A stretch of DNA of 64,000 nucleotides, from NCBI GenBank assembly GCA_964234715.1, contig OZ174279.1; one strand, 5' to 3'. Source of the stretch: Podarcis melisellensis (taxonomy: Eukaryota). Numbering within the stretch: the stretch's first letter is position 1; each line of letters begins with the position of its first letter. The position numbers were made by a program, and so were the translations under genes. Of this stretch, positions 15,380 to 46,858 are shown piece by piece. The notes beneath the pieces are model-generated. The model had not been told where the DNA came from. It did no database searches and was given only the letters and a program-made list of their open reading frames with translations.

Positions 15380-16960
15380 TTCCAGCAGGGCTTGCCCGGG
15401 GCTCCAGAGCACGAGGCCAGCTTCGCCTTCCTGCCCCCGGCGCGGCCTGGGAGGCGAAGAAAACAGCCCGAGCGGAGCCCGGCCCTCTCGCTCCGACGCC
15501 AGGCGTGGTGTTTACACGGGAGGAAAGCCCGCTAAGGCTTTTTTGCACGCCCAAGCAACCGCTCCGTCCCCTGACAAGCCGCTCCTGCCTGAAGCAGCAG
15601 CAACAGCCAGCGCGGCCCTCCCACCCGGCCACTCCTCCGCCGCCGCGTGTCCCCGCCTCCCCTGGCGGCCCCCTCGTTTCCTGCTGCTGGCGGAGGCCGA
15701 GGGAGAAGGTGGCGGTGGAGGCGGTGGACGGAGGACAAGAAGCGCCCCGCAGCCGGAGCGAGCCTCGTCCGCGGAGGAAGCGCAGCAGCGCCGCCGCCCC
15801 CACCACCTCCTCCTCCCGCTTTCCTTCCGTGTGTGTGTTTGTGTGCATTTGCTCCACCGCCGCCCCCTTCCTCCTCCTCCGCTTCCCTTTGCAGCCCCTT
15901 CGCGTCTCTTCCTCCCCGCAGCCCGGGACAATAGAAGCAAGGGAGATGTCCTCCTCCGGCGGCGGCGGCGGCCACCAGCACAGCCAGAGCCGCGCCATTC
16001 CCACCCGGACGGTGCTCATCAACGACTCCTCGCAGCTACCTCATGACTATTGCACCACGCCCGGGGGGACGCTGTTCTCCACCACGCCCGGAGGTAACAT
16101 CAGAGCAGTAATAATAATCAGCCTCATCCTCTGGATGCACACGGGCCTTGCCGAGAGCTGTCCGTTGTGCATTTGCTCGCGGGCATTGCAAAAGGGGGCG
16201 CGGGCGCCCTATAGGTCGGGGTGGAGGGAGGAAGAAAAGGAGACGTCGCAGGGGCGCCAGCGAGCATGGCCAGCCAGGCTTTAAAAAAGGGGGACGAGGC
16301 CTCCAGAGGCGAGGCCGTCAATCATAAATGTAGCGGCGGCGGGGTGGGCGTGTAATTTTCTCTCCCCCCCCCTTAATAAGATTGGGGAGGAAGTTGGGAA
16401 GCTAAGTCGCTGAGTCTCCAGGCCATATGCTGGAAGCCCCCTTCGGTGGGCCTTGCTCTGCCCGGGTCTGCAGGGCGCCCGCAAGAAAGACGCGTGTTGG
16501 CGCGCCCCGACGCATGGCGGCGAGGTGGTTCTCTTTCCCCCTCGTTGCTCGAAAGGGGAAGCTGCTTCGGTGTACAAAGCATGGTGGGGAAGGGGGAGTT
16601 TGCCCCCAGAGCTAACGGGGAGGCCCTTCCCTCTCTCCCTGTCTCCCCGCCCCTCTTCCCGTCGTCAGTTTGCCTTGCCGCTTTCCTGGGCCGACCCGGG
16701 TCTAGCTAGGCCGCGCTCCCGGTGCGCGGGGCTGCTGGCGGCGAGTTATTTGTAAACAAGGCCCAGGAGCCTCGAGGAAAAAGCCCGTGACGGTTGCACA
16801 ATAGCAGGGGAGGAGCGCCGAGGCGGGCGGGGGATTTCTCCGACAGCTGCAGCCCCTGCAGGGAGACGGAGCGCCGGCTCCGCCGAGGGGTCGGCCAGCC
16901 TCCCAAGACAGGGGGAGATCGAGGGATCCCGACCAAAAGAAAGGATAACCCTTTTGCAGA
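15380..16960 (+). promoter_or_regulatory. EIF4EBP2: CpG island covering the EIF4EBP2 promoter, exon 1 and start of intron 1
   Basis: Very high GC and CpG density around the EIF4EBP2 start codon. Confidence 0.9.
15946..16093 (+). CDS. EIF4EBP2: EIF4EBP2 (4E-BP2) coding exon 1: [49 protein letters not shown]+1 nt
   Basis: RAIP motif and two TPGG phosphosites; 4E-BP2-type [11 protein letters not shown]; donor G|GTAAC at 16094; 148 nt, phase 1. Confidence 0.98.
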
Positions 16961-26177: not shown

Positions 26178-26354
26178 GTACCCGAATCATCTATGACCGC
26201 AAGTTTCTGTTAGATCGCCGGAATTCTCCCATGGCTCAGACTCCTCCTTGCCACCTTCCAAATATCCCAGGAGTTACCAGCCCTGGTACAATGACTGAGG
26301 ATTCCAAAGTGGAAGTAAACAATCTGAACAATCATGACGGGAAGCCTATAATTG
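26178..26354 (+). CDS. EIF4EBP2: EIF4EBP2 coding exon 2: (G)[58 protein letters not shown](G)
   Basis: eIF4E-binding motif YDRKFLL and IPGVT non-canonical motif; polypyrimidine cccccAG acceptor (26176-7) and G|GTAAGA donor; 177 nt keeps the frame. Not in the ORF track. Confidence 0.98.
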
Positions 26355-27151
26355 GTAAGAGCATGGCACATTTTGTTGTATAACTTTTCCATGATCGACT
26401 TTTAGGGTTTCGTAAAGTTTTGCTTCAAAATCATGTCATTTCTTTCCTCAGTGCAGCATATATCTTTTTATTTCAAAGTTGTGGGATATAGTGCTTTTCT
26501 TTGTCTTTAAGGAGCCTCTGCGTATGGAGCGCAGACTCAGTGAACTGTTGCACTGATCTTGTGTGGGTTGCTCGTATGCTGAATTATCGCCCTTAGGCTA
26601 CTAAAAACTCTGTAAAAGCGTAAGTTGATTGACAAACAGGAAACTGCCTCCTGTTCTGTCATAACTATTTAACACTGGTGAATTACCTCAAGGTTGTCTT
26701 GGATTTTGGATGGTGTGGTGAAAATTCAAGTCCGGACGTATGAGGTTGTAGGTCACACAATCCCCACTTCCTGACACAATCTCCACCTCCCCACACCCGT
26801 GTGGTTTTGATAGCATAACTTGCTCACATAGACTATCTGGAGCATGAAATATCCATTAGGAGAGCTAGATTTCAAGCCATCCATTAGGACTATTGGCTAC
26901 AAGCATATATTTAGCCTAAATGGGAGTTGGACAGCAAACCTATAGTGGGGAAAATGAGGCCAGTGGCATCTGGCATTCATTTTAATATATGATTTGACTG
27001 GTCTCAAACATGAGTTATTGGTATTTGTATTTAAATATGGTAATAAATGTGTGGATTTTGTGATGTACAGGCATATGATCATCAGGAAGATAGTGATCAA
27101 GTTCACTCCAGAAACATAAATATAGAACATGCTATACGTATGTACTGTATA

Positions 27152-30125: not shown

Positions 30126-30157
30126 GTGATGATGCTCAGTTTGAGATGGACATCTGA
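30126..30157 (+). CDS. EIF4EBP2: EIF4EBP2 coding exon 3: (G)DDAQFEMDI*
   Basis: TOS motif FEMDI then TGA (30155-30157); acceptor ccAG at 30124-5. Total CDS 357 nt = 118 aa. Confidence 0.98.
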
Positions 30158-33100
30158 TCTTCCATGAGGGGCAACCATGGGGAGACAACAACTCCTGATC
30201 ACCTGTGCACATCTGATTTGGCCAACAGGATCAACAACTGAAGGATGGAAGAAGAAGAAGCTGTTTTCCACTGGAATCTTCACTTCAGCTTTTGAAGTGC
30301 CAAAGGATAAGAGGACTATTTACCCCACTCCCCTTGATTCCCATTAGCCATGCAATGCTTCACCCCTCCTCCTTTGCTCTCTCCCCCCCACTTTTTGTTT
30401 TTAACCCTTTCATATCCCTGGTTTGTGACTGAATGGAAACCCATGATAAATTTATAGAGCTAAGGAGTGTCCCTTGGCTTCTCGCACTTTAGAGACAACT
30501 TATCAAATCATGCACACGCGAGAACTTGGCTTCCATCAGCATTTGGATAATTATTGCAATCTGCAACAACACCACAAAAAGGGGCCACGGAAGGGGTGGA
30601 TATATGCTTGAAGGGACACAACACTGCCGTTGTTCTCCTCTCCCTTAACTGCTGTCAATTTAATCCCATTTGGTAACCTGTTTCCGTGTATCTTTCATTT
30701 GTGTGTGCAGTGCACTCACTCGGATTCTTCTGTTTCTCCTTACTAATTAGTATATCTCGGCACTTGGTGGGGTTCTGTCTTGTACAAGGGCTTTGCTGTG
30801 ATGCCTTTCAAAATTATAAGTTCCCATCCTGTTGCGTAGAACAGGTGAGAAACCTAGAAAGAGCCACCACTCAAATCATGCATATTTCTCCTAGTGCCTG
30901 CTAGAAACTCCCCAATTCAAAAAACCAACCCTTCTCTCTTCAGCTTCCTAATTTGAACCCATCAGTGTTAAAGGAGAACCACATTTCGTTCTGACTTAAT
31001 ACCATACTTGATGGTCCTCTGGACTGTTTGTTTCCAAGTCTACTCTTCCCATTTTTGCTGCTGTTAACATCTGCCGGATTCTTTCCAAGTCTACTATTGT
31101 GCCAAAAGCATTCATTGAAACACCCTGGCTGTGCTTGACTAGAATAAGCTTTGCAAGAGTCTAGTGCTCTTGCATAAGCTTGGGACACCCTAAGATTTAC
31201 TTACTGGGCTGTTGGAATATGCCATTCTGATTTCGTGATGTGTGACTTGGGGTGGCGGGCAATCAAAAAGTTAGTAAGCCTATTGGAGCAAAACCACCCA
31301 GCTGTGATCCTGTTCACCCATCTTCTTGCACATTTCCTGAATTCACACATTACTAAATCAGCTGGGTGAGCAAGGTACCCTTTAGTTGCTGATGGCCTCA
31401 TTTAATTCGATTCTTATGGGTGAACTGCTTGCCTGGGCTTGAAAGGGAGAGAGCCCACTCATCATGGGAATTATAAGGCAGTCAGGCTACCTTGTGAGAG
31501 TGGATGAGTTCATGCCTTGGTTGCGGTGCTAGCTGATAACTTGAACTGTGTAAAAATGCATCTCCCTAAGGCTGCAATATTTTGTCACGTTTAATTGGCT
31601 AGATCGATCCATTAAAACCCATTTTCTCGAGTAAAACAAACCTTTTTTAATCTGACTATTTTTAGTGTGAGTACCTAGCAGAACCTACATGCAGGCAGCC
31701 AAAGAGACATAACAGGAAGGAATGTTTTGAATATGATGCTGCTTATGAAACATGGCGTGCATCATATACCATGCATGTTAGGTTTCCCTCCCTGCAAACA
31801 ATTTTTATTAATATGCACAGCTGGTAGGTTGATTTACATCACACTCCTGTGCATGTTTACTTAGAAGTAAGTCGGGCTTGGAACACACAAAAAGCGTGTT
31901 CGAGAAGACAGCTGCTAAAGTTCCTTTGCTTAGATGTCAGCTTTCTCCCAGGTACTAAGCGGTTGATGGTCGCAGCGGTTCATATGGTATCATCAGTGCT
32001 TTTTTTCTGGGGGGACGATGACGCAGGTGAACGCATACCCCTAAACATTTTGTGAATCTAAGTTTGGCCTCATTGAGGGGCAGTATTTCAATACGAGTAG
32101 GAAAATGAGAGTACCCCTAAACATTTTTTTAAAGAAAAAAAGCACTGGGTATCAGTATGCCATGGCAGCCTCTTTTTCCTGGGGCAGGATCTCATCCTGC
32201 TCTGGTAGTGTTTGCAAATGGGATGAATGGATCGTATGGTCCACAGTGGATGTCACAGTGTGATGTGGCAATTTCCCCCAAAGGATTTCATTCGGTTGTA
32301 GCTTGGTAGTTGTAGCACGGTACCCCAGCCTCAGGGAAAGTGGCAGCCACGCTATATTTGTAACTTCTGAATCGGTCCTGGGAGTTAAGCTGAACACAGA
32401 TGAATAGGTATTGGTAACAGAGAAAACTTCCAACACATGAACTCATCCCTTGGAATAGAATTCTGCCCCAACATCTCTTCTATAAATTGGCAAAGATCTT
32501 TTCTTTTGATTTAAAAGGGAGGGTCTAGTAACTTTTTTTTCTTTTTGCCTGCACTAAAATGTGAATATAGGAGCAAAATTGCTTTGTAACTGTTGATCTC
32601 TCAGGAATAGGCTCTGCTTGCAATGTTTCTGGGCAAGGCAACACTGCCCCTTAATAGTGGTGGTGGTGCAAAAGTGAACTAAGCTGTGATAAGCAGAGGG
32701 GATGCTCTTTAGCCGCGTTGCAAAACTTCCTGATTTTGCTTTGTTTTTGGTCAGGGTAGTTCTGAAGTGCACTATTAAGTCCAGCCCAGAGTCAGGGCAC
32801 AGTTGGATTTCCATCCTTCCTCTTGCATAATTGCCAGCAGTTGTTTCTAGAACCTCGTCGGCTTTTCTGTTGATGAGGCAGAACAGAGACCGTTTGCTCT
32901 GCAGTGCTGACAGTAGTGGAACTCGGATTTGTCTATGACCTAAGCCAATTTAGGCTGCAGTCGTAACCCCATTTACCTGGGAGTAAGCCCTGTTGAATTC
33001 AGTAGGACTTAACTTCAGGGTTGACATTGTTAGGAATGTGCTGTTAATTGGTGAGATGGAGGAGAAGGGCTGTACTTCAGATGTTGCTGACACCCACTTT

Positions 33101-36100
33101 TCTAATAGTATTTTTCAGAAACTCTCTTGGACTAAAGGAATGGCTTCAAACTTGCACACTCTCCCAAATCTCCAAGGGGTTATTACATACTATGAAATAC
33201 ATTTGGTAGTACCATTCCTTCCACCTCATAACAGAAAGTTAGCATGAAATGCATCAGGGCTTTCTATGTGTCACAATCAGTTCAGTTGCTGCTGCTGCTG
33301 CTGCTGTTGCCTCCATAATCTTTTGGACAAAGATAAGGAAAGAAAGACTATTTAACTAGTTCAGTGTAGGTGATCATATTTCTCTTTCTTGTTCTGCAGC
33401 AAGTTTCCAGCATGTCTCCAGGCAAGTCTCTTTGTGCCTCAATTCCCCACTTGTTAAGATGGGGACAATAGACTCCTGCCTCACAGGGTTATTGTGAGGA
33501 TAAATTGGTAGATATTTGTAAGGCACTCCCCCCAAAAAACCAACCCCTGGCATGAGTACCACAAAGAAACCAATAAATCTTACATTTATTTTAATACCCA
33601 GCCAGGTGGTTCAGTCGTGGCCATGAAATAAGAAAGGTTGCTAGCATCTCCTGGATTATTTCCCTATGGCGAACAACTTAGTTTTTAAGAGAGCATCATT
33701 TTGATGGAACAAAGGTTGAAGGGCCAGCAACAGTTGCTCTGAGAGTTGAATGGGCTAAGGGCTCCTTGGTGCCTTTCCTCTGCAGAGGCTATACCAGAGG
33801 TTTAACCCCCTTGTGCATTTCGGTTGCCCAGTCCCTTTTTGCCTGTGGCTTGGCCTGCCCAGGGGAGTGAGTAGCCAAGCTGCCCAAGGAGAGAACTCTT
33901 TCTGGGGAGATGGCAGAAAGCCCTTTGCCTGTGACTCTGCTCCATGCTGAAGAAAAGGGCTGAGATAGCACAGCATAAGGACTGGGGGAGCTATATGAAA
34001 GGGCCCTGGGCTGCCAGCTGCGCCCATCACTTCTCTGGCATACAGCAGTGCTGAGCTGAGCCAACTGAACACTAAGCCTACACAGCAGCCTTTATGGTTC
34101 TGGCTGTCTAGTTTGAAGGAGGGGGGAGAGTCCTTTAAATGCCCGTGCAATTGCAGTTCTCTGTACAGTCTTCTTGCTGCATCCTGTGCTTCCAAGTGGT
34201 GCTCCGGTTTATGCAAGAGATCAAACCGATTCCCCATCAGGTTATAAGTTGTGTTGACTGAACAATCACAAGTACATATTCAGTGGCTTGCCATTTTAAG
34301 ACGCCAGAACACACAGGCACTCCGAACATGCCCTTTCCCATTACTATTAATCCTGATTCCAAGATACTAAGATGGAAAGTTGCACTTTTTTAAAAACAAC
34401 AACAACAGTGCAGTTTTCTGCAACTGCACTGAGGAATGGTGTTTAACCCTTGGCAGTCACTTAAAATTATGTTTGCTGCTGGCTTTTATGCTGTAATGAT
34501 GTTACTTGAAAGATTTCTACTTGATGGCTGAGTGAGTAAAAAGTTAACAAAAAAGAACCCGACAGCAAGTTAGTATTTTTACCCCCACAAACTCAAAACT
34601 GCAATTTCTTATATTGTGTCTTCCTCACAATGTCACCACCAAAGCTATATGGTGGGTGTTTAGATTTCATTTTATTTTGCTTTTGAAAAGCATCTTTGGC
34701 TGGCTGAGACTCCCAAGTGCTGCTGTGACAACTCTGATCTATACCAGTCATTTTAGATTACCAGGGCTGCAATATTTGGTCTATCAATCTTTAGATTAAC
34801 AGGGCTGCAATATTTAGTCTATCAAACATTTTGGTCAGCAGAAAAAAGGAACAGTAGATTGAAAAAATAAACTTTAATACAAGTACTTCTACAAATTGCA
34901 GTGAAAACATCCCTTTTAGAGCCGCCCCTCCATTTGTGAGAGAAAATGGGTATGGGTTGTTTTTTTAAAGCTATTGTATATGCAAATACATGCAGTTTTA
35001 ATTAGTTACCTGACTAAAACTTAACCATCAGCTAAGATTTATTTAATCACTTGACAGCCTTGTTGATCAGTCTGTATTAGCTTGTCTTTATTCACACCAG
35101 TAAGTGACGAGTCAGGGATGGCCAATGTCTGTATTCTGTGGCTGTTCTGGAGGCCAGAAATGTGCTTTGCCTCCCAAACTGGATGGCCAGGCAATCTTGC
35201 AGTAAAGGGACATCACAGTTGTGTCTGAGCCCAGACATTGTGTGCAAAAAGCCAAAGAGAGTTGTAGCATGAACCGTATCTCTTGCTTACCCCACTTGCA
35301 AACATTCCCCCCACCCCACCCCATTAGTGCTGAAATTGTAAGATACTTTTTACTATGCCTTTGATTAAAGTACATTAGGGCCACTAGCTAATACAATATT
35401 GGAAGATTGGGAATTATGAGGCTACCCTGGAAGAAGGAATACAGCTCTGGCCTTATCGCCTAGTGTAGTAAGGAAGCAAATTGTGGCTTCAAACATTGTG
35501 ATGTTATGAAGAGACATCTGATGTGGGGCAGGGGGAACCACCACTGAAAAAGAAACCCAATGACATGGCACAGTGGTATATGATTTGGGGGCATGTTGCC
35601 AGAAATACCTAGATAACATGCATTTTGGGTGTGCCTTCATTCTGAGATAACCGAGAACGTGTATAAAACGCCATGCAAAAAAAGATATGGTAAATGTAGT
35701 GCATACATTGGCTGAAACCTGTGGTTGGAGTAGGCAGTTTTCTGCTTCAACTTGGCTTCTAAACTTCCAGCTTTCTGACATAACTGCCGCTGAAAGGAAA
35801 ATGTGCCAGGAGGCCTGAGCCTCTACTATGCCTTATGTTTCCAATGCCCTTCCTTACCTATACAAAACAAGAATATTCAAGCTCCAACACCTGATTGTCC
35901 TTGTTTCTACGTTAAATCTTGCATCGTGAGTTTCTTGTTGCAATAACAAGTCAGATCCCAGGTTTTCAAAGAGCACTTTTGTTGGCCCTTAGCTAAAATT
36001 GGACATTTGGGCTTGCTATACCTGTAAGAACCCTTACAGCCCTCAAGAATTGCCGCTTTAGTAAGCCTTTCGTTCTTACGCCTTTGTATTTGGGAACCAC

Positions 36101-38350
36101 CAGCTGGCTTTCACAACCAAGGGTTTGGTGCAGATGAGTCTTGAGTGGCGTAGAAAGATTGGGAACCGAGTCAGTATTTCATTTTAAAGGGGGATGATTG
36201 TGATGGTCTGGAATCAGGAGTCTTATCAGGAATATGTAGTTACACTTTTGCTTAATTTCCCCCATGATAGGTATCCTGATAGGTAGCTCACCAACTCATA
36301 CAGATCACCAGTTTTTGTGACATAGACTAGAATTGAAGATACTCAAGTACTTAACTTCTACTGTGACTTACTTCTGTTGTATTAGTAACAGCTTTAGCAT
36401 ACTGAACTAACAGCAACATAATGGATGCTTAAATGTGGCCTTGGAATCTGTTCTGTGTTATGCTGGAGTACCACGTTTATTGACTTTGAACAGAAACCAC
36501 ATTTGGAAAAGTTGGCCAAATCAGTGGTGGAGTTCTTCGTACTGTCACCAAAGATCACTAGCACAGCGTTGTATCAAGTTGTACAAGTATTTCCACCAAT
36601 GAAAAATGTTTCCAGACCCCAATTAAAAATCACAGTCACTATTACTTTTAAGTGTCACATTCTATGGTATTTGGTTGTGTACATAGGATGTAAGTTGCCA
36701 GTGGGATTTACCATTGTAAATCAACTAAGGCACTGGAAGGGATGCTAGCTTCCTTAAGAGACCCATGGAAGGTTTGAGATTTCACATCAGTAGGCCATTT
36801 CTTGTCCGGGATCCCTTCAAGCAGCCAGCACCAATTTCACACCGGGGAGTGACATTCTAATGTCAGCCTTGGGTTCCTGCTGTCCGCTGCCATTGTAGCC
36901 CTGATACTTCTCTTTGCAATTTCTGGTGCCTCTCAACCATTGATGATACTGTCCTTGAAATTTCAATAGATTGTTTTATTTCCACTAGTATAGTTAGCCA
37001 TTGATTATATTCAGTATTTCACTTTGGGTCTCAGGACTGTGCTAAAACATTCTGGAGTAGTTTTCTAGTTGGGATATTTTGGCGTCAAAGATGAAGAGAT
37101 GTTTCACTCCTTTCTTTTTTTTTTCATTTGTGCTAATTTTATTTCTCTCTAAATGTACTTGGCTGATTGATGTAGCAATGAGTTTTAACTCAGTTTTTCT
37201 TTCTCTCTTTGGGCTGGGAGAATAATTCCCTTCTGCATTTCCGTAATTGTTCATAATGGTAAAAGAGTTCATATAGGAAACCTTGATAGGCATTTTGAGA
37301 AGTAAACTTTGTTTATGCCCCTGCGACATTCTGTGAACTGAACTTGATTGCAACAGTTCATAAAATGGATTTACAGAAATTAGCTGCTCCTTATGTACAT
37401 TCTGTGTGGCAATGATCTGCTTGCCTTTTTCTTTTATTTTTGTCTCCTTCATCCTGACATTATGCTGCACAGAAAGCTTGAGAGGTTGAAAGATTGGCTT
37501 TTGATAGTCATCAGCAAAATTGGGTAACTGTGGAAAATTATAAATCTATTGTGTGGAGAAAGGGTGAGTGCAAAAATTAAATATGTATATGTATGTGGGT
37601 GGATGCTTATACACACACACAAATATATATAAATATATATAGATATATATATGAATTTTTAGAGAAATAAAGAACTGTGTTGATGCTTTTAATGCAGGGA
37701 GAAATTTTACTTAGGGCTGATCATAGGGAATATCTGGTTTAGCAGAGCATATATTTCACAAAACCAGCTTTACAACATCCAAGGATAATTTATCTTGATC
37801 CCAAAATGCAAATGCAGCAGGAACCAGGTATAAAAAGTATGTGTGCGAGTCAAATAAGATTTGGAAGATTTCATCAGCATCTTGGCCTGTGTTTACATCA
37901 AGAACACAACAGGACTTCCCTTCCTCCTCTTGCAATCTCCCTCTCTCATGTCAATCTGCATCTCTGCAGGATGGTAATCCAGTGTGCCTTTCTTCACCTT
38001 AAGACAGGAGAAGAATTATTAACATTTGTGGGGCAGCTTGTTTTCTGGGTTTTTGTGGCCTCCTCGGGAAAAGTGTGGAGGCTGCTGCCAATAAAATTAC
38101 TGAATGTCTCTGACACAATTTTTTTTTAATTGGTTATACCTGTCTCCTTCCTATTTACTGAACACGTCCTTCCTCACCCTCCATATTCTGTCTTTGTCTA
38201 AATGTAATCCTGGTTTAAAAGAAAACAGAAGTTGTCTGAACAATCCTTGGGCTACTTCTGTACAAATCTGGTTTTTACTGAAACAGGTGTTTAGGGAAAA
38301 CACTCACCAATGGTTGCTGTTACCATGAGATCAATAAAGATCTTGATTAT
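30158..38350 (+). other. EIF4EBP2: Probable long 3'UTR of EIF4EBP2 (~8.2 kb), distal poly(A) signal AATAAA at 38333-38338
   Basis: TE-poor, AT-rich region after the stop. AATAAA is followed by GT/T-rich sequence, and young MITEs resume just beyond (38478). Mammalian EIF4EBP2 has a multi-kb 3'UTR. The end point is inferred. Confidence 0.6.
31994..32147. mobile_element. hAT-type MITE within the putative EIF4EBP2 3'UTR (related copy ~11120-11290)
   Basis: CAGTGCTTTTTTT / AAAAAAAGCACTG TIRs; TSD ggtatca(t/g). Confidence 0.8.
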
Positions 38351-38477
38351 ATCAAGCTGCAGTGTTGCGTGTTTTTCCATATTGAATCGGTAAGAAAACG
38401 TGGGGTTGAGGATAGCAAAAGCCAGAGCTGAGCACATTTCTCTTTGAAGAAATAAAACTTGATAGAAATATAGAATA

Positions 38478-38692
38478 CAGTGGTACCTCAGGTTACATAC
38501 GCTTCAGGTTACAGACTCCGCTAACCCAGAAATAGTGCTTCAGGTTAAGAACTGTGCTTCAGGATGAGAACAGAAATCGGGCTCCGGCGGCGCGAGGCCC
38601 CATTAGCTAAAGTGGTGCTTCAGGTTTAGAACAGTTTCAGGTTAAGTACAGACCTCCGGAACGAATTAAGTACTTAACCTGAGGTACCACTG
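38478..38692. mobile_element. Tc1/mariner MITE, family B
   Basis: Same TIRs and TA TSD. Confidence 0.9.
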
Positions 38693-40187
38693 TATTGGAC
38701 AATAATTGGATTTGTAGTGAATTATTATATAGCATATAATAATTATATAGCATATAATAATTACCAAGAGACCTTCAACATCCATCATTTTGTTGATCAT
38801 CACAAAGTCCTTGCTAGATAGGCTGATGTTACCTTTAACTATTGTGTTAGAACTGGTAGTACTGAATAATGCAATAGGCCATTCAATTTGAGAACCTGTT
38901 TTTCCCCCAACAGATGGGAGAAGAATACCAGTAATCAATGGCTTGTATTTTCTTGGATATTTTCTTGTGAACCTAAATCTGGATCAGAACATTTAGATCT
39001 TGTTTTAGGAGGAAGTCCATCCCTCTTCACCAAAACAAAGACATCTCCATCATCATTGCCATAAAGGTTTGCTCATTTATTCCCGTTTCTTCTTTCAGGA
39101 ACATGAGGATGATTTCCTGCATAATTTTTACCTATCAAGAGTAACAATATAGATACATTTTAATGCTGATTTATTGAACAAGACACCCTGCTCTTACATG
39201 GAGTTCCCAGTGGTCTCTCAAATTAGTGGTCAGGTCCAAACTCGATTAGCTTCAGAATGCAATAACTTCTGGTATCCACAGTCCATATACCAGGTCCCAT
39301 TTACAATATTTACAGTCTACTGAATGTTTACATATGGCATTGGAGTGATGCTCTTACTTGGCTACAGCCATTCATAAGCAGAAACTGTTTTCAATGAAAA
39401 GTGTTACCTAGGGCCAGCCTTTCAATTAGAGAAGTGTGATATCTGCCTCAAAAGTACAAGTCTTGCAAAAACTGGCTGACGAATGAACAGCAGCTGGCTG
39501 CCTCTCAATACTGACACCCTCAAATTTAGCTTCATGAAGCCCTGGGATTCTGAGGAAGTTGGGAATGCAGTGCAGAAGTCCTGCTGTTGCCTGACTGGGA
39601 TTGGGAAGGGGATACAAGGAAACCAGTGGTGCTGGGGTGGCATGTCCAGGTTGGGAAGAGGAGAAGGGTGTGGTTCACAGAGCTGTCTTCTAGAGAGGAC
39701 ACAGGATGGTTTGCTTTATGTACATTTTGGGAACTTGTTTTCAGTTTAGCTCATGTGAGGACCTGCAACGGAATGTTGCAATGCACCCCCCACTTAGTGC
39801 AAGTGGGCTTTTCTCCTGGGCTTTAACCACCCTGGAACAAGAACTTTATAGTCGTGTTGAGCTGAGGGCTCTGAGAAGTGGTGAGAAAGTTCTCTGGAAA
39901 GCATAAGGACAGTATTCCCTTTCTTCACTTTCTTACTCTCTGCAAACTTTCCACTGTAGTACTACATGATGCTAGCCCTGAACCTGAGCTGCTTATTGCC
40001 AAATAGTGGTGAGCATAGTGGGAAGGTTTCTGCAAAAAGGAACTGTGTCCTTTTTCATTCTCTTCCTCCAGGCCTCCCCTTGATGGGAATGATATGTATG
40101 CTACTCTGAACTCCTTAGAGAAGATATTAAACTGAGCTTGATCCAGTTTCTTCCAAAATTGGTGGGTGCTACTTTTGGCTTACTTAC

Positions 40188-40441
40188 CAGCATGTAGGTA
40201 TTTTTTGCTGGCTGGAATCCCTCTTTCAATGGGGCAGAACAGTCCCTCATGGTAGAAGGCATTGTATTGCTTGGGGGTATACAACTGAGGAGCTCCTGCC
40301 TATCTCCTCAAAATTCACATTGAAGTCCATTCTTTCATGCAACTCCAGTTCTTTCAAGTTCAGTAAACGAGAGTTCCAGAGTTATTTATTGTTGTGCCTT
40401 TGCCTCTTGGTGACTTTTGGGGTCTCCTGCATAACATATTG
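40188..40441 (-). pseudogene. NODAL: NODAL (Nodal1 paralogue) pseudogene, 3' part of exon 2: prodomain end, degenerate furin site and N-terminal half of the mature TGF-beta domain
   Basis: Minus strand reads QYVMQETPKVTKRQRHNNK*LWNSRLLNLKELELHERMDFNVNFEEIGRSSSVVYP[+1]KQYNAFYHEG[-2]DCSAPLKEGFQPAKNTYML|GTAAGT. Human NODAL reads KRHRR…[52 protein letters not shown]|GT. Same phase-0 intron position, and same position and orientation (tail-to-tail with EIF4EBP2) as mammalian NODAL. Confidence 0.9.
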
Positions 40442-41240
40442 GCAGTGGATATGCTGGGCCGTTATCTTGCCTTGGTAATGGGACTGGATTAGATCCAACA
40501 AACTGAAGCTCAAATCAGATAAAGACTGTTAGTGGGCAGTTCCATAGACTGGATGGATGAGAAGTTTGCCTGCTCTTGGTCACATGAATCACGTTAGATG
40601 GAATAAGGCAAAATGCAGTGAGCAGCTCAAACCCCAACCCATGTACAATATATGAGAAATATTCTTGATGCCCTGTGTTGACAGATGAAAGTTGGAACGC
40701 TGCTTATTTTGGGACTTGGATGTGGGCATCAGCAGGATGATATCACCTATGCTGATTTTGCACCTCAGTCTCCAGCTATTAATTAGGAAACTCAGTGAAA
40801 GTGTCTGCATGGCTAACAGTGAACTTCCACATTTGGCATGTTGTCAGGGGAGAAAAAGCCCTTCAAATGACGCTTCCTGTGCTTTGGCATGTTTTCTACT
40901 GCACTGAACTGAGAGCACATCCTGTGTGGTCTCAACTTGAGCGTGCCCTTGCCAAACTCAGTGTAGCAGTTCCTGCTTCAGTTATTCTGCTTACTCTCTT
41001 AAGTAAAATACAACAGGAACAGGTGCCTGTGGAGTGTGTGCGTGGGAAGGGGAGATAAAGGGAGAGGTGAAAGAGAGAGACCCATCCTCACCTTAATTCA
41101 ACACTGGCCTTCACCTGGCACCATCACCTTGCCTTGTCCGACTCCTTCTTCCCAAGGACTTCCGCCCAGTCAAGACGATGACATTTGCTTACTGTATGGT
41201 GGCACTTTTGGGGAAGGGCGCCCCACTAAAGGCTCACCAT

Positions 41241-41405
41241 CAGGGGGGACAACTTGAATAAAAATGGGGGGGGGAGCTGAGCCCCGCCCTGTGTCGTTGA
41301 TTACATGATATGGTGCATGCACACTATTTGAACGGCGATGTCCATCAACTTTGGGGGGCTCTATCCCCCTCAAATATTGGGGGGGCTGAAGGGACCTTGG
41401 CCCCT
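41241..41405. repeat. Dispersed repeat homologous to 14997-15190, inside putative NODAL intron 1
   Basis: Same shared blocks as 14997-15190. Confidence 0.7.
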
Positions 41406-41419
41406 GTACACACCGTATA

Positions 41420-41970
41420 AGATGGCACAGCTGAGGAGGAAGAAAAGGAGAAGCGTCCTTCCCTTCCCTGCTTGGCCTGCAGCCTCACCGGGCTCCTCGG
41501 GCTCCTCCTCCGGCCACTTTTTGCGCCAGTCCCGCCGAGAGAAGGTGCAGCCGCCACCGCTTCCTCCTCCTCCTCCTCCTCCGCAAGGATTGCCAGGGTC
41601 GTGCTGACCAGCGGCGGCGGCGGCGCCTCCCCTGCCCTGACTTGCCGCTTCTGTTTCGCCGGCCCTGCGAGCTACGCGCGCAAGGCGCCAAAACTGAAAG
41701 GGGAGAAAGCGCACAGGGGAAAGCGGGGAGGATTGGAGATCTGCAGGCTTGGGGGGGGGAGGGGGGTGCAGCAAAACAGTGAAAGGGGGAGAGCAGGCTA
41801 GACTTTCACCAAAACGGAGACGACGAATACATTTTTGTCCCACCTATCAGCTTCTGAAAATATCATCCACTTGCTCTTGGACTCTTCGACTTCTTCCTAC
41901 GCGGAGAGGCAGACAGCCCTCCCGCCTCCCTCGCGAATATCGCTTGCGTCATTTGCTGCCTCAGTCCCGG
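41420..41970. promoter_or_regulatory. Orphan CpG island inside the NODAL relic
   Basis: CpG-dense, (GGC)n and (CCT)n runs, E2F-like TTTGGCGC and GGCGGGA motifs; no recognisable protein. Confidence 0.6.
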
Positions 41971-43294
41971 CGTAATTATTCCTTATTTTAGCAAAGAAAA
42001 GGCATATGCATTATAAAAGCCCATGGCACCAACCATGTCTGAGGGAACCAAACAGTTGTCGGGACCCATTTGGTAAAGACAAAAAATGTAGGGTCCTTTA
42101 AGTCATCCCAATGAGGACTGAGCAAATGTGAGCTGACTGCGGAATAGCGCTGGATTTCGGGCCGTGCAGGACAAGCCCAGGGGGCACATCCTCCTCCTCT
42201 ATTTATAGGGTGTACCAAATTTTGTCTTTGCTCAGGGTGCCATATTACCAAGGTCCACCTGGGGGCAGGGAATGAGAAGTAAGGAGTTTGGCTGAGATCC
42301 TTACTTAGGCCCCACTTTCCTTCTTCAGCATCCCTGGATTTATCACCAGAGTCTCCTGCTGCACCAAATCCTCTGTTCCCTAGCACCCTCCTTCGATGCC
42401 CTCAGAATGCCTCCTCCATAATCCCTCTCCTCACAATATTGCACCTTCATAAATCCTGAGCTCACAAACTTCTATTGCTGCTTTCCCACCTGAACTCCAG
42501 GTGAAAATCATTGTATATAGTTTTATGTTCAAGAATTGCCTCATCCACTCTTACGGATTCAAAACTCCCTTCACCTTGGATCTTTCACAATTGTGCCACA
42601 GGCCTACATTTCTCAACTTTTTAGCAATAAACTCCCTGCGTTGTCTTCCTCCTGGCCTAGAAGTCTGTTATCACTATAATCAATTTAACCACAACTCTCG
42701 CAACAATCTCTCCAATCCCACACCAAATTCCCTTTCTCCAGATTCTCCTGCATGTCATAGCAAGAAACAATACCTTCCTGACTCATCCTCACAGCCTCCA
42801 TGGTTCTCTGATTCACTTTATACCCTCACACCCTCCATAGCTTTGAATTTATTTTCAGGATGCAACTTTACATTATTAATTATATAATAACACCCTTTAA
42901 TATAAATATTTCCAGGGCTTCAGACACTCTTAATAAAAGCAATAAAGCAACAAACAGATATAACAAAAAGAGAAAATTGTAGAATCAGAATTTTTTAAAA
43001 AGCAAAGCCTGGGAAAATAACAAGGGGTTTGCTGGGGTGTCAGAAATAGTGAAAATTGGGTGGGATGTTTGCCCTAGGGAAAGCATCACCACTGATATGT
43101 CTCTTCAATAGACACCTGCCTCAGTTTAGATGGCAGGGACACACAAAGAGTATCTCTGAGGATGACCTCAGTTCACAGGCAGGGTGGCGGGACAGTAGGC
43201 AATCCTTCAGCTGCCCAGATCCAAACATTTGAAGCAAGGTGCGGAACCTCTGGCCCTCCAGATGTTGCTTGATTGTTACAATTATCAGTTTCGA

Positions 43295-44334
43295 TGACTG
43301 TGTTGACCACAGCAAACTATGGCAAGTTCTTAAAGAAATGGGAGTGCCTGATCACCTCATCTGTCTCCTGAGAAATCTCTTATGTGGGACAAGAAGCTAC
43401 AGTTAGAACTGGATATGGAACAACTGATTGGTTCAAAATTGGGAAAAGAGTATGACAAGGCTGTATATTGTCTCCCTGCTTATTTAACCTATATGCAGAA
43501 TTCATCATGCGAAAGGCTGGGCTGGATGAATCCCAAGCCGGAATTAAGATTGCCGGAAGAAATATCAACAACCTCAGATATGCAGATGACACAACATTGA
43601 TGGCAGAAAGTGAGGAGGAATTAAATAACCTTTTAATGAGGGTGAAAGAGGAGAGTGCAAAATATGGTCTGAAGCTCAACATCAAAAAACCGAAGATCAT
43701 GGCCACTGGTCCCATCACCTCCTGGCAAATAGAAGGGGAAGAAATGGAGGCAGTGAGAGATTTTACTTTCTTGGGCTCAATGATCACTGCAGATGGTGAC
43801 AGCAGCCACGAAATTAAAAGACGCCTGCTTCTTGGGAGAAAAGCAATGACAAACCTAGACAGCATCTTAAAAAGCAGAGACATCACCTTGCCAACAAAGG
43901 TCCGTATAGTTGAAGCTATGGTTTTCCCAGTAGTAATGTATGGAAGTGAGAGCTGGACCATCAAGAGGGCTGATCGCCAAAGAATTGATGCTTTTGAATT
44001 ATGGTGCTGGAGGAGACTCTTGAGAGTCCCATGGACTGCAAGAAGATCAAACATGTCCATTCTTAAGCAAATCAGCCCTGAGTGCTCACTGGAAGGACAG
44101 ATCCTGAAGCTGAGGCTCCAGTACTTTGGCCCCCTCATGAGAAGAGAAGACTCCCTGGGAAAGACCCTGATGTTGGGAAAGATGGAGGGCACAAGGAGAA
44201 GGGGAAGACAGAGGAGGAGATGGCTGGACAGTGTTCTTGCAGCTACCAGCATGAGTTTGACCAAACTGCGGGAGGCAGTGGAAGATAGGAGTGCCTGGCG
44301 TGCTCTGGTCCAACAACAACAACAAACAACAACA
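43295..44334 (+). mobile_element. BovB (RTE-clade) LINE, 5'-truncated and inactivated, 3' part of reverse transcriptase
   Basis: DCVDHSKLWQVLKEMGVPDHL…QGCILSPCLFNLYAE…NNLRYADD…FELWCWRRLLRVPWTARRSN. One +1 frameshift (~43380) and an in-frame TGA (~43453). Ends in a (CAA)n tail. Confidence 0.95.
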
Positions 44335-44489
44335 TGCTTTCTGGCAAACGAGTAAATCTGCACATCCAAGTTTCTGAAGCCACGTCCATCCTTCGGCGGT
44401 TCAAAACATGCACTGAGCTTTAGGTTTAAGTTCTGCATAATGAGGTGTGTGCAAAGAAAGAAAGAAAGAAAGAAAGAGAGGAAAGGAGG

Positions 44490-45260
44490 GGCGGTTCCGA
44501 GTGCTGCTTTTTCGTGGGACGGGCACAAGAGCAGTAGCTGAAAAGAGCCATCTGTCTGCGCCGGGAAACAGCTGCAGCAGCTGGCAAAGCGCAGCCGGCT
44601 GCGCATGTCCCTCCCTCCGCCGCCGGCGCTTTTGTGCGCACATTTGTAGCCAAGCGAGGGCGGCCGGTGAGCCTGAGGGGGTTCCGTCCGCGGGAGAAGA
44701 AGCGGCGATCGGAACCTGGAGCTAGGGCAAGAGGCAGGAACTCCGCCCGGCTCCTTGTTTGGGGAGGAGCGCGCGGCAGTGGATGCGCCCCGGGCTCTGG
44801 GGAGGAGGAGGAGGAGGAACAAAAGGCTGGCCCAGGCGGCGCCCCTCGGCGCAGCTCCTCTCTCCAGAGCCGGCAGGGGATGCCGTCCCTCCGGTGAGTG
44901 AGTCCCCTCCTTTGGTGCTCCGCCTTTTGGGTCCGTCCCGCCGCCCTCGCTCCCCGCGTCTCCTGGCGAGCTGGCAGGAAGTGCTGCTGCTGCTGCCGCT
45001 GCTGCCTGAGTCTCGTCTCCATGCACCGGTTTACCGCGAAGAGCCACCGGGAAGGAGGTGAGGCAACAGGGGCCGCCTTGAGTTCCCCAGCTCTCGTGAC
45101 TCCCGCAGCCCGCCGGGGATCGGAGGCCTGCCCTGGCGAGGGCAGCTGTTGGGGCTGAAGGGCAAGATCTCAGCCGTCGCCCCTGCAGACTTTCTTGGAT
45201 GCGAGACGCTCGCTGGCTTGGCGAAGGGAACCTCGCGTTGGCATCCCGGCGCGCTTCATG
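44490..45260 (+). promoter_or_regulatory. PALD1: CpG island, probable PALD1 promoter and non-coding first exon (donors at 44894 and 45058)
   Basis: CpG island with GC boxes and plus-strand donors CCG|GTGAGT and GAG|GTGAGG. Assigned by synteny only (EIF4EBP2-NODAL-PALD1 order); the PALD1 MGTTAS start was not found in the window. Confidence 0.6.
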
Positions 45261-46818
45261 CCTACTCGTAAGTAAACCCCACGGGGCTCATTGCAGCTGG
45301 CTGCCTAGGAAGGGGTGCTTGGGGTTGCAGCCTCACAGCAGGCTAGTCCATACATGTTTACTCGGAAGTAAGTTTCCTTCAGTGGGACTGAATTGGGTTC
45401 GTGTCCTATTGCATGCATGCATACTCTGAATGGGCAGCATGTGTGCGATCCAATATTTTTCCTTTAAAAAAACACCAAAACACCCCATTCCTGGTCGGAG
45501 ACCAAAAGGCATTGTTAAATTAGGCATTGTTCCACGGTTTCCTTTGCATAGGTAGGGGAAGGTGTGGGTGCAATTCTCTGTGTGGGTCTCTAAGGCAGTC
45601 ATCTCCATCCTGACCTCTCCAGATACCTTGGAGTACCAGTTCCCATCAGCCACAGCCAGTGGGGTCAGTGGTCAGGGGTGATGGGAGTTGTGGTCCAGAA
45701 CATCTGGAGGGCACCAGGTTGGGGAAGGCTGCGTAGAGGGTATGAGCCTCACTTTGGAAGAGACACAGAGCGAAAGGTGCTGTGTTCAAAACCTAGGCAC
45801 TCTCTTACATACAATGGTGTGTTAGTTTGTGGCCATCATCTAGAAATAACTAATGTGAATCTCAGTAGGATCTGCGTTTTTTTGTATGTGTGTTTAGGAT
45901 CACACAGTGTGTTAAGTGGTGGTTAGTGCATGGCTAAAAGAATTCACATATGTATTATGGTTGGTGTTTTTACTCAGAGTAGAACTACTGAAGTTAATCA
46001 GCCTAACTTAGCCGTGTTCATTTATTTCAGTGGGCCTATTCTTAGTGAAACTTAGTGGAATGCCACCCTGTTCTGTTCTGATCTCTTGCCTCATGCCTAC
46101 TGTTTTAAGCACTTCTTTGTTCACACAGTCAATGGGGCTGTCTTATTTCTCTGCAACAGCCTGATAATCCACAATGTTGCTAACTGGGGGGGGGGGGAAG
46201 CCACCTTCCTAGAAAATTGAGCCGTCTCTGCTTCATTTGCTTTCATTTTGACTCTTCAGCCTTTACCCTAAAAATATATACAGTATATCTTCCCAAAAAT
46301 ACCCTCAGGGAAAAAAGAAGAAAACATTCCACATCTCCCCGTGGGATCCCTGATGGAATCAGGACTCTTTAGTCTAGCACAAAAGCCTTGCAACCAGAGG
46401 AGGCAGTTCCTTCCATTAGGAAGGAAATAGGTTTGCTTTGCCTTGGGAGTTAGAAGGCCTGCACTGACTGGGAGCGATATTTAGCATTTTCGAGGCTTTC
46501 CCTGCTAGACTTGGCCATGTACCAAACCACGTTGTGTGCTTACTGCATGAGTCTTCTCCAAATGCAACTGTAATTTCTTTGCTTCACTTGCTATGCTGCA
46601 AGATACAAATGGACACGATCATAATAGAAAACCCTTACTGAGTCAGCACAGGCGGCTGTTGGTTTCCATGGCATGGCTTCTGCTTTTACTTAAATACAGT
46701 ATAAATGGGTGCATCCAGACCTGTGATGTATTGCCCAATCTCCATCCCCTGACATGTCTCTGTCGCTCCTTTCTAGGTGAATTTTCTCACAGCAGCGCCT
46801 GCTTCTTCTTATAGAGCT

Positions 46819-46858
46819 CCTAACCCTAACCCTAACCCTAACCCTAACCCTAACCCTA
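46819..46858. repeat. Interstitial telomeric repeat (CCCTAA)~6.7
   Basis: Perfect vertebrate telomere hexamers. Confidence 0.95.

What the first reader, a model, noticed from the sequence alone, without database searches (positions are those of the whole stretch)
40188..40441. Hidden NODAL (Nodal1) unitary pseudogene between EIF4EBP2 and the presumed PALD1 promoter
Seen: joining three minus-strand frames gives KRQRH (40408-40394, eroded RxxR furin site), TAA (40384-82), then LHERMDFNVNFEEIGRSSSVVYP, a +1 C (40273), KQYNAFYHEG, a 2-nt deletion (~40245), DCSAPLKEGFQPAKNTYML and a GTAAGT donor (40187). It aligns residue by residue with the NODAL mature domain ([52 protein letters not shown]) and ends at the conserved phase-0 intron. 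Two knot cysteines read as His, both Trp are lost, and there are two frameshifts and a stop. Established, as I recall: vertebrates have two Nodal paralogues, one at EIF4EBP2-PALD1 (kept by eutherians) and one at EIF4EBP1-ASH2L (kept by chicken and other reptiles), and both were reported expressed in veiled chameleon. Inference: this is the fossil of the mammalian-type left-right and mesendoderm ligand. That it is still readable suggests a lineage-specific loss within squamates, not one ancient sauropsid loss. The ORF track misses it entirely.
Basis: partly seen in the sequence, partly recalled or inferred. Interest (0 to 1): 0.92.

Follow-up and report, generated by a model that had tools for sequence, protein, structure and literature searches.

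The report
Dead Nodal1 exon beside lizard EIF4EBP2
A wall-lizard-type (Podarcis-like) genome carries a broken 51-codon remnant of a Nodal growth-factor gene at the place where mammals keep NODAL, so this lineage appears to have lost that gene while keeping its bird-type paralogue.

Summary
On the minus strand, 40342-40188 reads in three frames as 51-52 codons colinear with the end of Nodal exon 2. There is one extra C in the run 40273-40277, a 2-nt loss at about 40243-40245, and a GTAAGT donor at 40187-40182.

A frameshift-tolerant alignment of a real lizard Nodal2 exon 2 (Podarcis lilfordi, L011) against both strands of the window puts its best hit here. It scores 91, against about 50 elsewhere and a maximum of 66 in 150 shuffles (P about 1e-6). 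A profile of 119 sauropsid Nodal2 proteins scores 93.7, against a maximum of 46.8 in 379 kb of other genomic DNA.

The remnant ends at the phase-0 intron shared by Nodal2 and human NODAL (c.891+1). It lies tail-to-tail with EIF4EBP2, 10 kb past its stop codon, as in human.

Contigs of four related taxa carry it. Two demonstrably share both frameshifts, so these are not assembly errors. The TAA stop is not shared by all.

No exon 3, prodomain, exon 1 or PALD1 exon was found. The Nodal1 assignment rests on synteny plus three Nodal1-only residues. Decay (19 of 38 invariant residues replaced) suggests an old loss.

This is a new case of a known patchy reptile loss. Interest is moderate.

The parts
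40188..40342 (-). Remnant of the 3' end of Nodal exon 2. It covers the first half of the mature ligand, from the Leu before knot Cys 1 to the codon before intron 2, as 51-52 codons in three frames.
   Evidence: reading; score 91 against a shuffle maximum of 66, P about 1e-6 to 2e-8; profile score 93.7 against a background maximum of 46.8; traceback.
40273..40277 (-). Five-C run holding one extra C (+1 frameshift between the Pro and Lys codons).
   Evidence: One search shows no indel difference here in the contigs of runs X12 and X15.
40240..40245 (-). Loss of 2 nt (-2 frameshift) between the Gly codon and the retained knot Cys codon.
   Evidence: One search shows no indel difference in X12 and X15.
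40182..40187 (-). GTAAGT splice donor directly after the last aligned codon, in phase 0.
   Evidence: The position matches the Podarcis lilfordi Nodal2 exon 2 end and human NODAL c.891+1 (PMC10988827; peptide numbering from PMC4613256).
40382..40384 (-). In-frame TAA in the variable N-terminal arm. It is not fixed: two of four related taxa read TCA.
   Evidence: 40383 T>G in X4 and X12.
40394..40408 (-). Basic cluster K-R-Q-R-H, 19-23 codons upstream of the first knot position. It may be the old furin site but this is unverified.
   Evidence: The alignment does not extend this far.
40460..40640 (.). Genome-wide repeat immediately upstream of the remnant. It interrupts where the rest of exon 2 should lie. 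Boundaries are approximate.
   Evidence: depth is 100 to 1000 times the neighbouring bins, and contigs break at 40525-40543.
15946..16095 (+). EIF4EBP2 coding exon 1.
   Evidence: The product is identical to P0122.
26180..26356 (+). EIF4EBP2 coding exon 2 (approximate ends).
   Evidence: E 1e-37 to lacertid 4E-BP2, PF05456.
30128..30157 (+). EIF4EBP2 last coding exon with its stop codon. The Nodal remnant's donor lies 10,030 nt downstream, on the opposite strand.
30158..38200 (+). EIF4EBP2 3' UTR or conserved downstream blocks, alignable to Anolis, Sceloporus, Heteronotia and Hemicordylus.
41400..42100 (.). CpG island upstream of the remnant. No Nodal exon 1 or prodomain signal was found in it.
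   Evidence: GC 0.57-0.65, observed/expected 0.63-0.88; no hit above shuffles.

Best explanation
This is a non-functional relic of the ancestral Nodal1 gene, the 'mammal-type' NODAL, in a Podarcis-like lacertid lizard. It is a pseudogene left at its original locus with its intron boundary intact. About 155 nt survive in recognisable form. They are the last 51-52 codons of exon 2, which once encoded the N-terminal half of the secreted TGF-beta ligand (finger 1 and the pre-helix loop).

The relic can no longer make a ligand. It has two frameshifts, two of the three cystine-knot cysteines in this stretch are replaced, both Trp are lost, a repeat is inserted just upstream, and no exon 3 is detectable.

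Shown: homology to Nodal, the shared intron position, the convergent arrangement with EIF4EBP2, and presence of the lesions in related taxa.

Inferred: (1) that the parent gene was Nodal1 rather than Nodal2, from position; (2) that no intact Nodal1 exists elsewhere in the genome; (3) that inactivation is old, on the order of 1e8 years; (4) that Nodal signalling in this lineage now runs on Nodal2 alone.
For: 1. Similarity to Nodal. A frameshift-tolerant alignment of Podarcis lilfordi Nodal2 exon 2 (L011: PF00688 + PF00019; orthologues named 'nodal homolog') against both strands of the window peaks at 40191 on the minus strand. The score is 91 after two penalties of 15, against about 50 elsewhere. 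150 shuffles gave mean 48, sd 4.3, max 66; 400 shuffles of the last 80 aa gave a max of 57. Gumbel P is 1.4e-6 and 2e-8.
2. Profile and background. A profile of 119 sauropsid Nodal2 scores 93.7 at the same place. The maximum is 46.8 in 379 kb of other loci (both strands) and 37 in the masked window. The true Nodal2 exon scores 268.
3. Alignment path. The traceback is gap-free over 51 columns.
4. Intron position. The exon ends at the same codon as Nodal2 exon 2, with its donor right after the H-A-Y-I-Q motif. It also matches human NODAL, where c.891+1 means the exon ends after codon 297, which is mature residue 60.
5. Synteny. EIF4EBP2 is verified on the + strand. NODAL and EIF4EBP2 are convergent in human (PMC10988827). 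The Nodal2/EIF4EBP1 pair in L011 is arranged the same way.
6. Family specificity, by hand counts from printed alignments: 22/52 identical to human Nodal and 23/52 to the Nodal2 consensus, but 14/51 to BMP2 and 16/51 to BMP10.
7. Nodal1-only states. Three residues match human Nodal1 and are never seen in the 119 Nodal2: Phe at column 7, Ile at 14, Gln at 25.
8. Not a recent Nodal2 copy. DNA similarity to Nodal2 is limited to 20 nt.
9. Not an assembly artefact. Contigs from four other runs span the relic. For X12 and X15 every gap in the spanning contig is accounted for by listed rows, and none falls at the frameshift sites.
Against: - No Nodal1 protein could be fetched by reference, so no program-scored comparison or tree against Nodal1 was made.
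- Residues at diagnostic columns are mixed: R4, D6, E12 and V21 match Nodal2 rather than human Nodal1.
- Exon 3, the prodomain and exon 1 were not detectable with Nodal2 queries.
- PALD1 was not found in the window.
- Absence of an intact Nodal1 elsewhere in this genome was not tested.
- For runs X4 and X5 some indel rows were hidden, so shared frameshifts are shown for only two of the four taxa.
Confidence: 0.85

Rival explanations
1. The fragment descends from a copy of Nodal2, or another Nodal-family duplicate, that landed next to EIF4EBP2. It would then not be the ancestral Nodal1 orthologue.
For: At four or five diagnostic columns the relic matches the invariant Nodal2 state rather than human Nodal1. 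Overall identity to Nodal2 (23/52) is not lower than to human Nodal1 (22/52).
Against: DNA similarity to the congeneric Nodal2 does not extend beyond 20 nt. Three states are identical to human Nodal1 and absent from all 119 Nodal2. The position and convergent orientation relative to EIF4EBP2 are those of Nodal1 (PMC10988827, PMC11398420). The intron boundary is retained, so it is not a retrocopy. The states shared with Nodal2 can be ancestral states that mammals changed.
Confidence: 0.06
2. The resemblance is chance, produced by freely joining three reading frames.
For: Each piece alone is undetectable in Pfam and PDB. Plain tblastn gives only E=3. The PROSITE-type TGF-beta signature alone, with one mismatch and free frames, would be expected by chance in 128 kb (my estimate).
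Against: The null models allowed the same frame-joining and reached 66 at most, against 91. Real genomic DNA reached 46.8 at most, against 93.7. The hit also sits at the expected locus, on the expected strand, and ends at the conserved splice site.
Confidence: 0.01
3. The gene is intact but divergent, and the frameshifts and stop are assembly errors.
For: The window assembly was not checked against its own raw reads. Only Logan contigs were available.
Against: Independent contigs of four other runs carry the same sequence. Two of them provably have no indel at either frameshift site, and one has an additional 24-nt deletion inside the core. Knot Cys and both Trp are replaced by substitutions, not indels. 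No exon 3 is present. The CpG observed/expected ratio of 0.05-0.16 fits neutral decay.
Confidence: 0.01
4. The relic is dead as a coding gene, but the DNA has been reused, for example as part of a non-coding transcript from the CpG island at 41.4-42.1 kb that still uses the strong GTAAGT donor.
For: The donor is a perfect consensus, and a CpG island persists 1.2 kb upstream.
Against: No RNA run holding the stretch was found. Related taxa show substitutions and a 24-nt deletion at ordinary neutral density.
Confidence: 0.05

Closest known systems
Human and mouse NODAL (Nodal1), the EIF4EBP2-linked TGF-beta ligand
   Same: The locus and convergent orientation with EIF4EBP2 are the same. The exon 2/intron 2 boundary is the same (after codon 297, phase 0). 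22 of 52 residues are identical, including the seven-residue Y-P-K-Q-Y-N-A run and the retained third knot Cys.
   Different: Here the gene is broken: two frameshifts, knot Cys 1 and 2 and both Trp replaced, a repeat inserted upstream, and exon 3, prodomain and exon 1 not recognisable.
Sauropsid Nodal2 ('bird-type' Nodal; Podarcis lilfordi gene in L011 next to EIF4EBP1)
   Same: Same family and same intron position. The arrangement with a 4E-BP gene is a mirror image. 23 of 52 residues are identical to the consensus. This is the sequence against which significance was computed.
   Different: Nodal2 is intact and lies on another chromosome. It is invariant for Met, Thr and Lys/Arg at the three columns where the relic has the Nodal1 states Phe, Ile and Gln. 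No DNA-level similarity extends beyond 20 nt.
Eroding or absent Nodal1 in other reptiles (partial Nodal1 in Paroedura picta; absence in snakes, softshell and sea turtles, crocodiles and birds; PMC12344233)
   Same: The same gene was lost or is decaying in a sauropsid lineage that keeps Nodal2.
   Different: A lacertid case and a located, datable relic are not described in the papers I could search.
BMP2 and BMP10 (the next nearest solved TGF-beta ligands)
   Same: The general cystine-knot framework and the family signature around the C-x-G-x-C motif.
   Different: Only 14-16 of 51 residues are identical, and the A-P-P-G-Y motif stands in place of Y-P-K-Q-Y. BMPs have no intron at this position (from memory, not tested).

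Membership tests
Nodal subfamily of TGF-beta ligands (by descent) | Significant sequence similarity of the mature-domain segment to bona fide Nodal proteins, better than to other TGF-beta ligands | tested here: met
   (P about 1e-6 to 2e-8; score 93.7 against a background of 46.8). Hand counts are 22-23/52 for Nodal against 14-16/51 for BMP2 and BMP10.
Nodal subfamily of TGF-beta ligands (by descent) | Phase-0 intron inside the mature domain, directly after the H-A-Y-I-Q motif | tested here: met
   GTAAGT at 40187 follows the last aligned codon. The boundary is the same in L011 Nodal2 and in human NODAL c.891+1.
Functional TGF-beta ligand | Open reading frame with all cystine-knot cysteines and a furin cleavage site | tested here: not met
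   Two frameshifts; Cys to His at two of the three knot positions in the segment; both Trp lost; exon 3 (four more Cys) not found; no R-x-x-R motif.
Nodal1 orthogroup (as opposed to Nodal2) | Location next to EIF4EBP2, convergent with it | tested here: met
   EIF4EBP2 exons lie on the + strand at 15.9-30.2 kb and the relic on the - strand 10 kb past the stop. Literature: PMC10988827, PMC11398420.
Nodal1 orthogroup (as opposed to Nodal2) | PALD1 on the other flank | tested here: inconclusive
   No PALD1-like coding exon was recognised in 45-64 kb. My motifs came from memory. The CpG island at 44.4-45.4 kb is unassigned.
Nodal1 orthogroup (as opposed to Nodal2) | Groups with Nodal1 proteins in a tree, or carries Nodal1-diagnostic residues | tested here: inconclusive
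   Three Nodal1-only states (F7, I14, Q25) stand against four or five states shared with Nodal2. No Nodal1 sequence was available by reference, so no tree was made.
Unitary (unprocessed) pseudogene | Disabling lesions at the ancestral locus with the intron boundary retained, that is, not a retrocopy | tested here: met
   The sequence after the donor shows no similarity to exon 3.
Unitary (unprocessed) pseudogene | No intact copy of the same gene elsewhere in the genome | not testable with these tools
   Only this window is readable. Unchecked scan notes mention only an intact Nodal2 elsewhere.

The most novel reading that the evidence does not exclude
Nodal1 was inactivated early in the lacertid or lacertoid stem, on the order of 100 million years ago, independently of the losses in snakes, turtles and archosaurs. 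Wall lizards would then pattern mesendoderm and the left-right axis with Nodal2 alone. The two shared frameshifts would give a datable marker for when a squamate lineage gave up the mammal-type ligand.
Probability: 0.5. Interest if true: 0.45.

Novelty: new member of a known kind. Interest (0 to 1): 0.38.

Why it matters
Which reptiles keep the mammal-type Nodal1 and which keep only the bird-type Nodal2 bears on how left-right symmetry breaking changed in amniotes. Published surveys describe a patchy pattern: anole, chameleon, Gekko and some turtles keep Nodal1, while snakes, other turtles, crocodiles and birds lack it.

A located relic in a lacertid adds one more independent loss. Unlike a mere absence from an annotation, it offers concrete lesions that can be traced across lacertids, amphisbaenians and teiids to date the event.

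It also warns that embryological work on wall lizards should expect a single Nodal gene. It does not reveal a new mechanism.

Tried and rejected
Searches on the three pieces, one at a time:
- Pfam and PDB gave no TGF-beta hit.
- The large protein search with the 44-aa piece found no candidate sharing three words.

- The joined, frameshift-corrected peptide was never sent to any search or fold tool, because it has no reference. It was only scored inside my own scripts, directly on window DNA.
- Program scoring against human NODAL was left out for the same reason. Only hand counts from the printed peptide table and the printed PDB alignment are given.

Attempts to reach a squamate Nodal1 gene, by fetching EIF4EBP2 plus or minus 10 kb:
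- Species tried: Anolis sagrei, Sceloporus, Heteronotia, Hemicordylus, Xenopus laevis, Cottoperca, Podarcis muralis, P. raffonei, P. lilfordi, Lacerta agilis and one more lacertid.
- All flanks stop short because the EIF4EBP2 3' UTR is about 8-10 kb.
- The Podarcis flanks end 20-85 nt before the relic.
- An Elgaria '4E-BP2-like' gene turned out to be a retrocopy.

Other dead ends:
- The last protein search, with Nodal2 exon 2, returned 120 Nodal2 and no Nodal1.
- Motif and profile searches for exon 3, for the prodomain and exon 1 and for PALD1 found nothing.
- No RNA run holding the stretch was found.

Full report
WHAT IS IN THE SEQUENCE

- a basic cluster K-R-Q-R-H at 40408-40394;
- TAA at 40384-40382;
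- three coding-like pieces in three different frames (40345-40274, 40272-40243, 40244-40188);
- a consensus donor GTAAGT at 40187-40182.

The shift between pieces 1 and 2 is one extra C in a run of five C (40273-40277). The shift between pieces 2 and 3 is a 2-nt loss at about 40243-40245. The window has no N.

PIECES TAKEN APART

- None hits TGF_beta in Pfam or any TGF-beta chain in PDB.
- The large protein search found no candidate for the 44-aa piece.
- Plain tblastn with a real Nodal gives only E=3 for the middle piece.

The claim therefore stands or falls on a frameshift-aware comparison. The joined peptide has no reference, so I sent it to no search or fold tool. It was scored only in my own scripts, on window DNA.

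CONTEXT

EIF4EBP2 lies on the + strand, with coding exons at 15946-16095, about 26180-26356 and 30128-30157. Exon 2 matches lacertid 4E-BP2 at E 1e-37, and the spliced product equals P0122.

The window is 93-95% identical to Podarcis muralis, P. raffonei and P. lilfordi, and about 90% identical to Lacerta agilis. The source is therefore a Podarcis-like lacertid.

Conserved blocks of the long EIF4EBP2 3' UTR reach about 38.2 kb. The relic's donor lies 10,030 nt past the EIF4EBP2 stop codon, on the opposite strand. This is the convergent arrangement described for human NODAL and EIF4EBP2 (PMC10988827).

I could not find PALD1 coding exons in 45-64 kb. That flank, and the assignment of the CpG island at 44.4-45.4 kb, stay open.

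GETTING A REAL NODAL BY REFERENCE

Ten-kilobase flanks of EIF4EBP2 in eleven species all stop short of Nodal1. I therefore took a detour:
1. A representative search with 4E-BP2 gave a Podarcis lilfordi 4E-BP1.
2. Its locus, L011, holds a convergent TGF-beta gene with PF00688 and PF00019.
3. That gene's exon 2 (coding end at L011 49385) and exon 3 (46157-46306) can be read by reference.

Its orthologues are named 'nodal homolog', and all 119 usable hits carry the Nodal2 signature P-K-K/R. In this gene exon 2 ends right after the H-A-Y-I-Q motif, with a GT donor, and exon 3 starts with S-L-L-K.

THE TEST

I wrote a local protein-versus-DNA alignment that allows frame changes. It uses BLOSUM62, with a penalty of 15 per frameshift and 12 for the first gapped residue or codon plus 2 for each further one.

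- Single-sequence query. P. lilfordi Nodal2 exon 2, run against both strands of all 64 kb, has its best score of 91 ending at 40191 on the minus strand. Elsewhere the best is about 50.
- Shuffled queries. 150 shuffles of the 286-aa query gave mean 48.0, sd 4.3 and max 66. 400 shuffles of the last 80 aa gave mean 42.6 and max 57. Gumbel P values are 1.4e-6 and 2e-8.
- Profile query. A profile of 119 sauropsid Nodal2 scores 93.7 at the same place. The maximum is 46.8 over 379 kb of other fetched loci on both strands, and 37 in the window with the relic masked. The true Nodal2 exon scores 268.
- Traceback.

INTRON POSITION

The last aligned codon is followed at once by GTAAGT. The same boundary is seen in Nodal2 and in human NODAL. 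A splice variant c.891+1G>A is listed for NM_018055.5 (PMC10988827), so exon 2 ends after codon 297. By the peptide numbering of PMC4613256, codon 297 is mature residue 60, the Q of H-A-Y-I-Q. The reading after the donor shows no likeness to exon 3, so this is not a retrocopy.

WHICH FAMILY AND WHICH PARALOGUE

By hand, from printed alignments, the relic shares:
- 22/52 residues with human Nodal;
- 18-25/52 (mean 22.9) with individual Nodal2 sequences, and 23/52 with their consensus;
- 14/51 with BMP2 and 16/51 with BMP10.

My hand BLOSUM62 sums are about 120 for human Nodal and about 70 for BMP2.

At columns where Nodal2 is invariant in all 119 sequences, the relic has the human Nodal1 state three times: Phe for Met at column 7, Ile for Thr at column 14, and Gln for Lys/Arg at column 25. 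It also shares R4, D6, E12 and V21 with Nodal2 against human Nodal1. The simplest reading is that the shared states are ancestral and mammals changed them. Without squamate Nodal1 sequences this remains an inference.

DNA similarity to the congeneric Nodal2 is confined to 20 nt, which excludes a recent Nodal2 copy. The Nodal1 assignment therefore rests mainly on position.

REST OF THE GENE

- Exon 3 is not detectable between 37.5 and 40.19 kb with the Nodal2 profile (26.1, below the null mean of 29.5).
- Prodomain and exon 1 are not detectable between 40.4 and 43.4 kb with seven Nodal2 proteins.
- A genome-wide repeat occupies about 40460-40640, directly upstream of the relic.
- A SINE lies at 38476-38695.
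- A BovB-like reverse-transcriptase ORF lies at 43468-44355.
- The CpG observed/expected ratio around the relic is 0.05-0.16.

ARTEFACT OR REAL

Logan contigs of four other runs cover the relic colinearly at about 97-98.5% identity. One run carries the same species label from another sample; the other three are related taxa.

For X12 and X15, the gaps listed by the tool add up exactly to the gap totals of the spanning contigs (14 and 84). None lies at 40273-40277 or 40240-40245, so both frameshifts are shared. For X4 and X5 some rows were hidden, so I cannot say.

Other differences seen:
- X15 has a further 24-nt deletion inside the core.
- 40383 T>G in X4 and X12 turns the TAA into TCA, so the stop is young or polymorphic.
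- At 40208 all four runs read the ancestral Thr codon where the window has Ala.

These are the marks of neutral drift in a dead sequence.

AGE (ROUGH INFERENCE)

Of 38 columns identical between human Nodal1 and the Nodal2 consensus, the relic keeps 19. With about 2.3 non-synonymous sites per codon, this implies about 0.3 substitutions per site. Podarcis and Lacerta differ by about 10% here. Assuming a split of about 30 My (from memory), the rate is near 1.7e-9 per site per year. That gives an order of 1e8 years, with an uncertainty of at least a factor of two.

The loss is therefore old, probably predating the lacertid radiation. It must still lie within squamates, because anole, chameleon and Gekko keep Nodal1 (PMC12344233, PMC10126504).

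WHAT IS KNOWN

The two Nodal paralogues, their synteny and the patchy loss of Nodal1 in reptiles are published. No paper in the searchable library mentions Nodal1 together with lacertids. Unchecked scan notes say the same genome holds an intact Nodal2 between ASH2L and EIF4EBP1. I verified that arrangement only in P. lilfordi.

VERDICT

This is a further, located case of a known kind of gene loss.

Noticed in passing
window 28641-29486 (within 28397-29976): A GC-rich 60-bp minisatellite (14 copies, 90% matches) lies in EIF4EBP2 intron 2. The 1.6-kb block has no counterpart in Podarcis muralis or P. lilfordi. It produces long spurious ORFs on both strands (404 and 374 aa, no Pfam hit).
   Followed up: partly
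window 46819-46858: Perfect (CCTAAC)x6.7 interstitial telomere-like repeat.
   Followed up: no
window 43468-44355 (+): A 295-aa reverse-transcriptase ORF of BovB/RTE type lies between the two CpG islands. It is about 72% identical at DNA level to a copy in the Anolis sagrei locus L001 4120-4518.
   Followed up: no
window 38476-38695; L002 33969-34201: The SINE at 38476-38695 is absent from Podarcis lilfordi (L012). P. muralis has a different SINE inserted at the point equivalent to window 40130. The P. raffonei alignment breaks at the same point, which hints at a shared insertion. These are young, lineage-specific insertions next to the relic.
   Followed up: partly
window 41400-42100 and 44400-45400: Two CpG islands lie upstream of the relic. 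Neither could be tied to Nodal exon 1 or to PALD1.
   Followed up: partly
L011 41796-46154: In Podarcis lilfordi, Nodal2 and EIF4EBP1 are convergent and only about 4.4 kb apart. This mirrors the Nodal1/EIF4EBP2 pair and supports duplication of the whole block.
   Followed up: partly
L010 10001-10351: The '4E-BP2-like' gene of Elgaria multicarinata is an intronless 351-nt retrocopy with an intact reading frame.
   Followed up: no
window 39837-41757 versus run X4: The run carrying the same species label as the window but from another sample differs by about 1.5% plus 18 gap letters over 1.9 kb. That is unusually deep for one species, or the label covers a distinct lineage.
   Followed up: no
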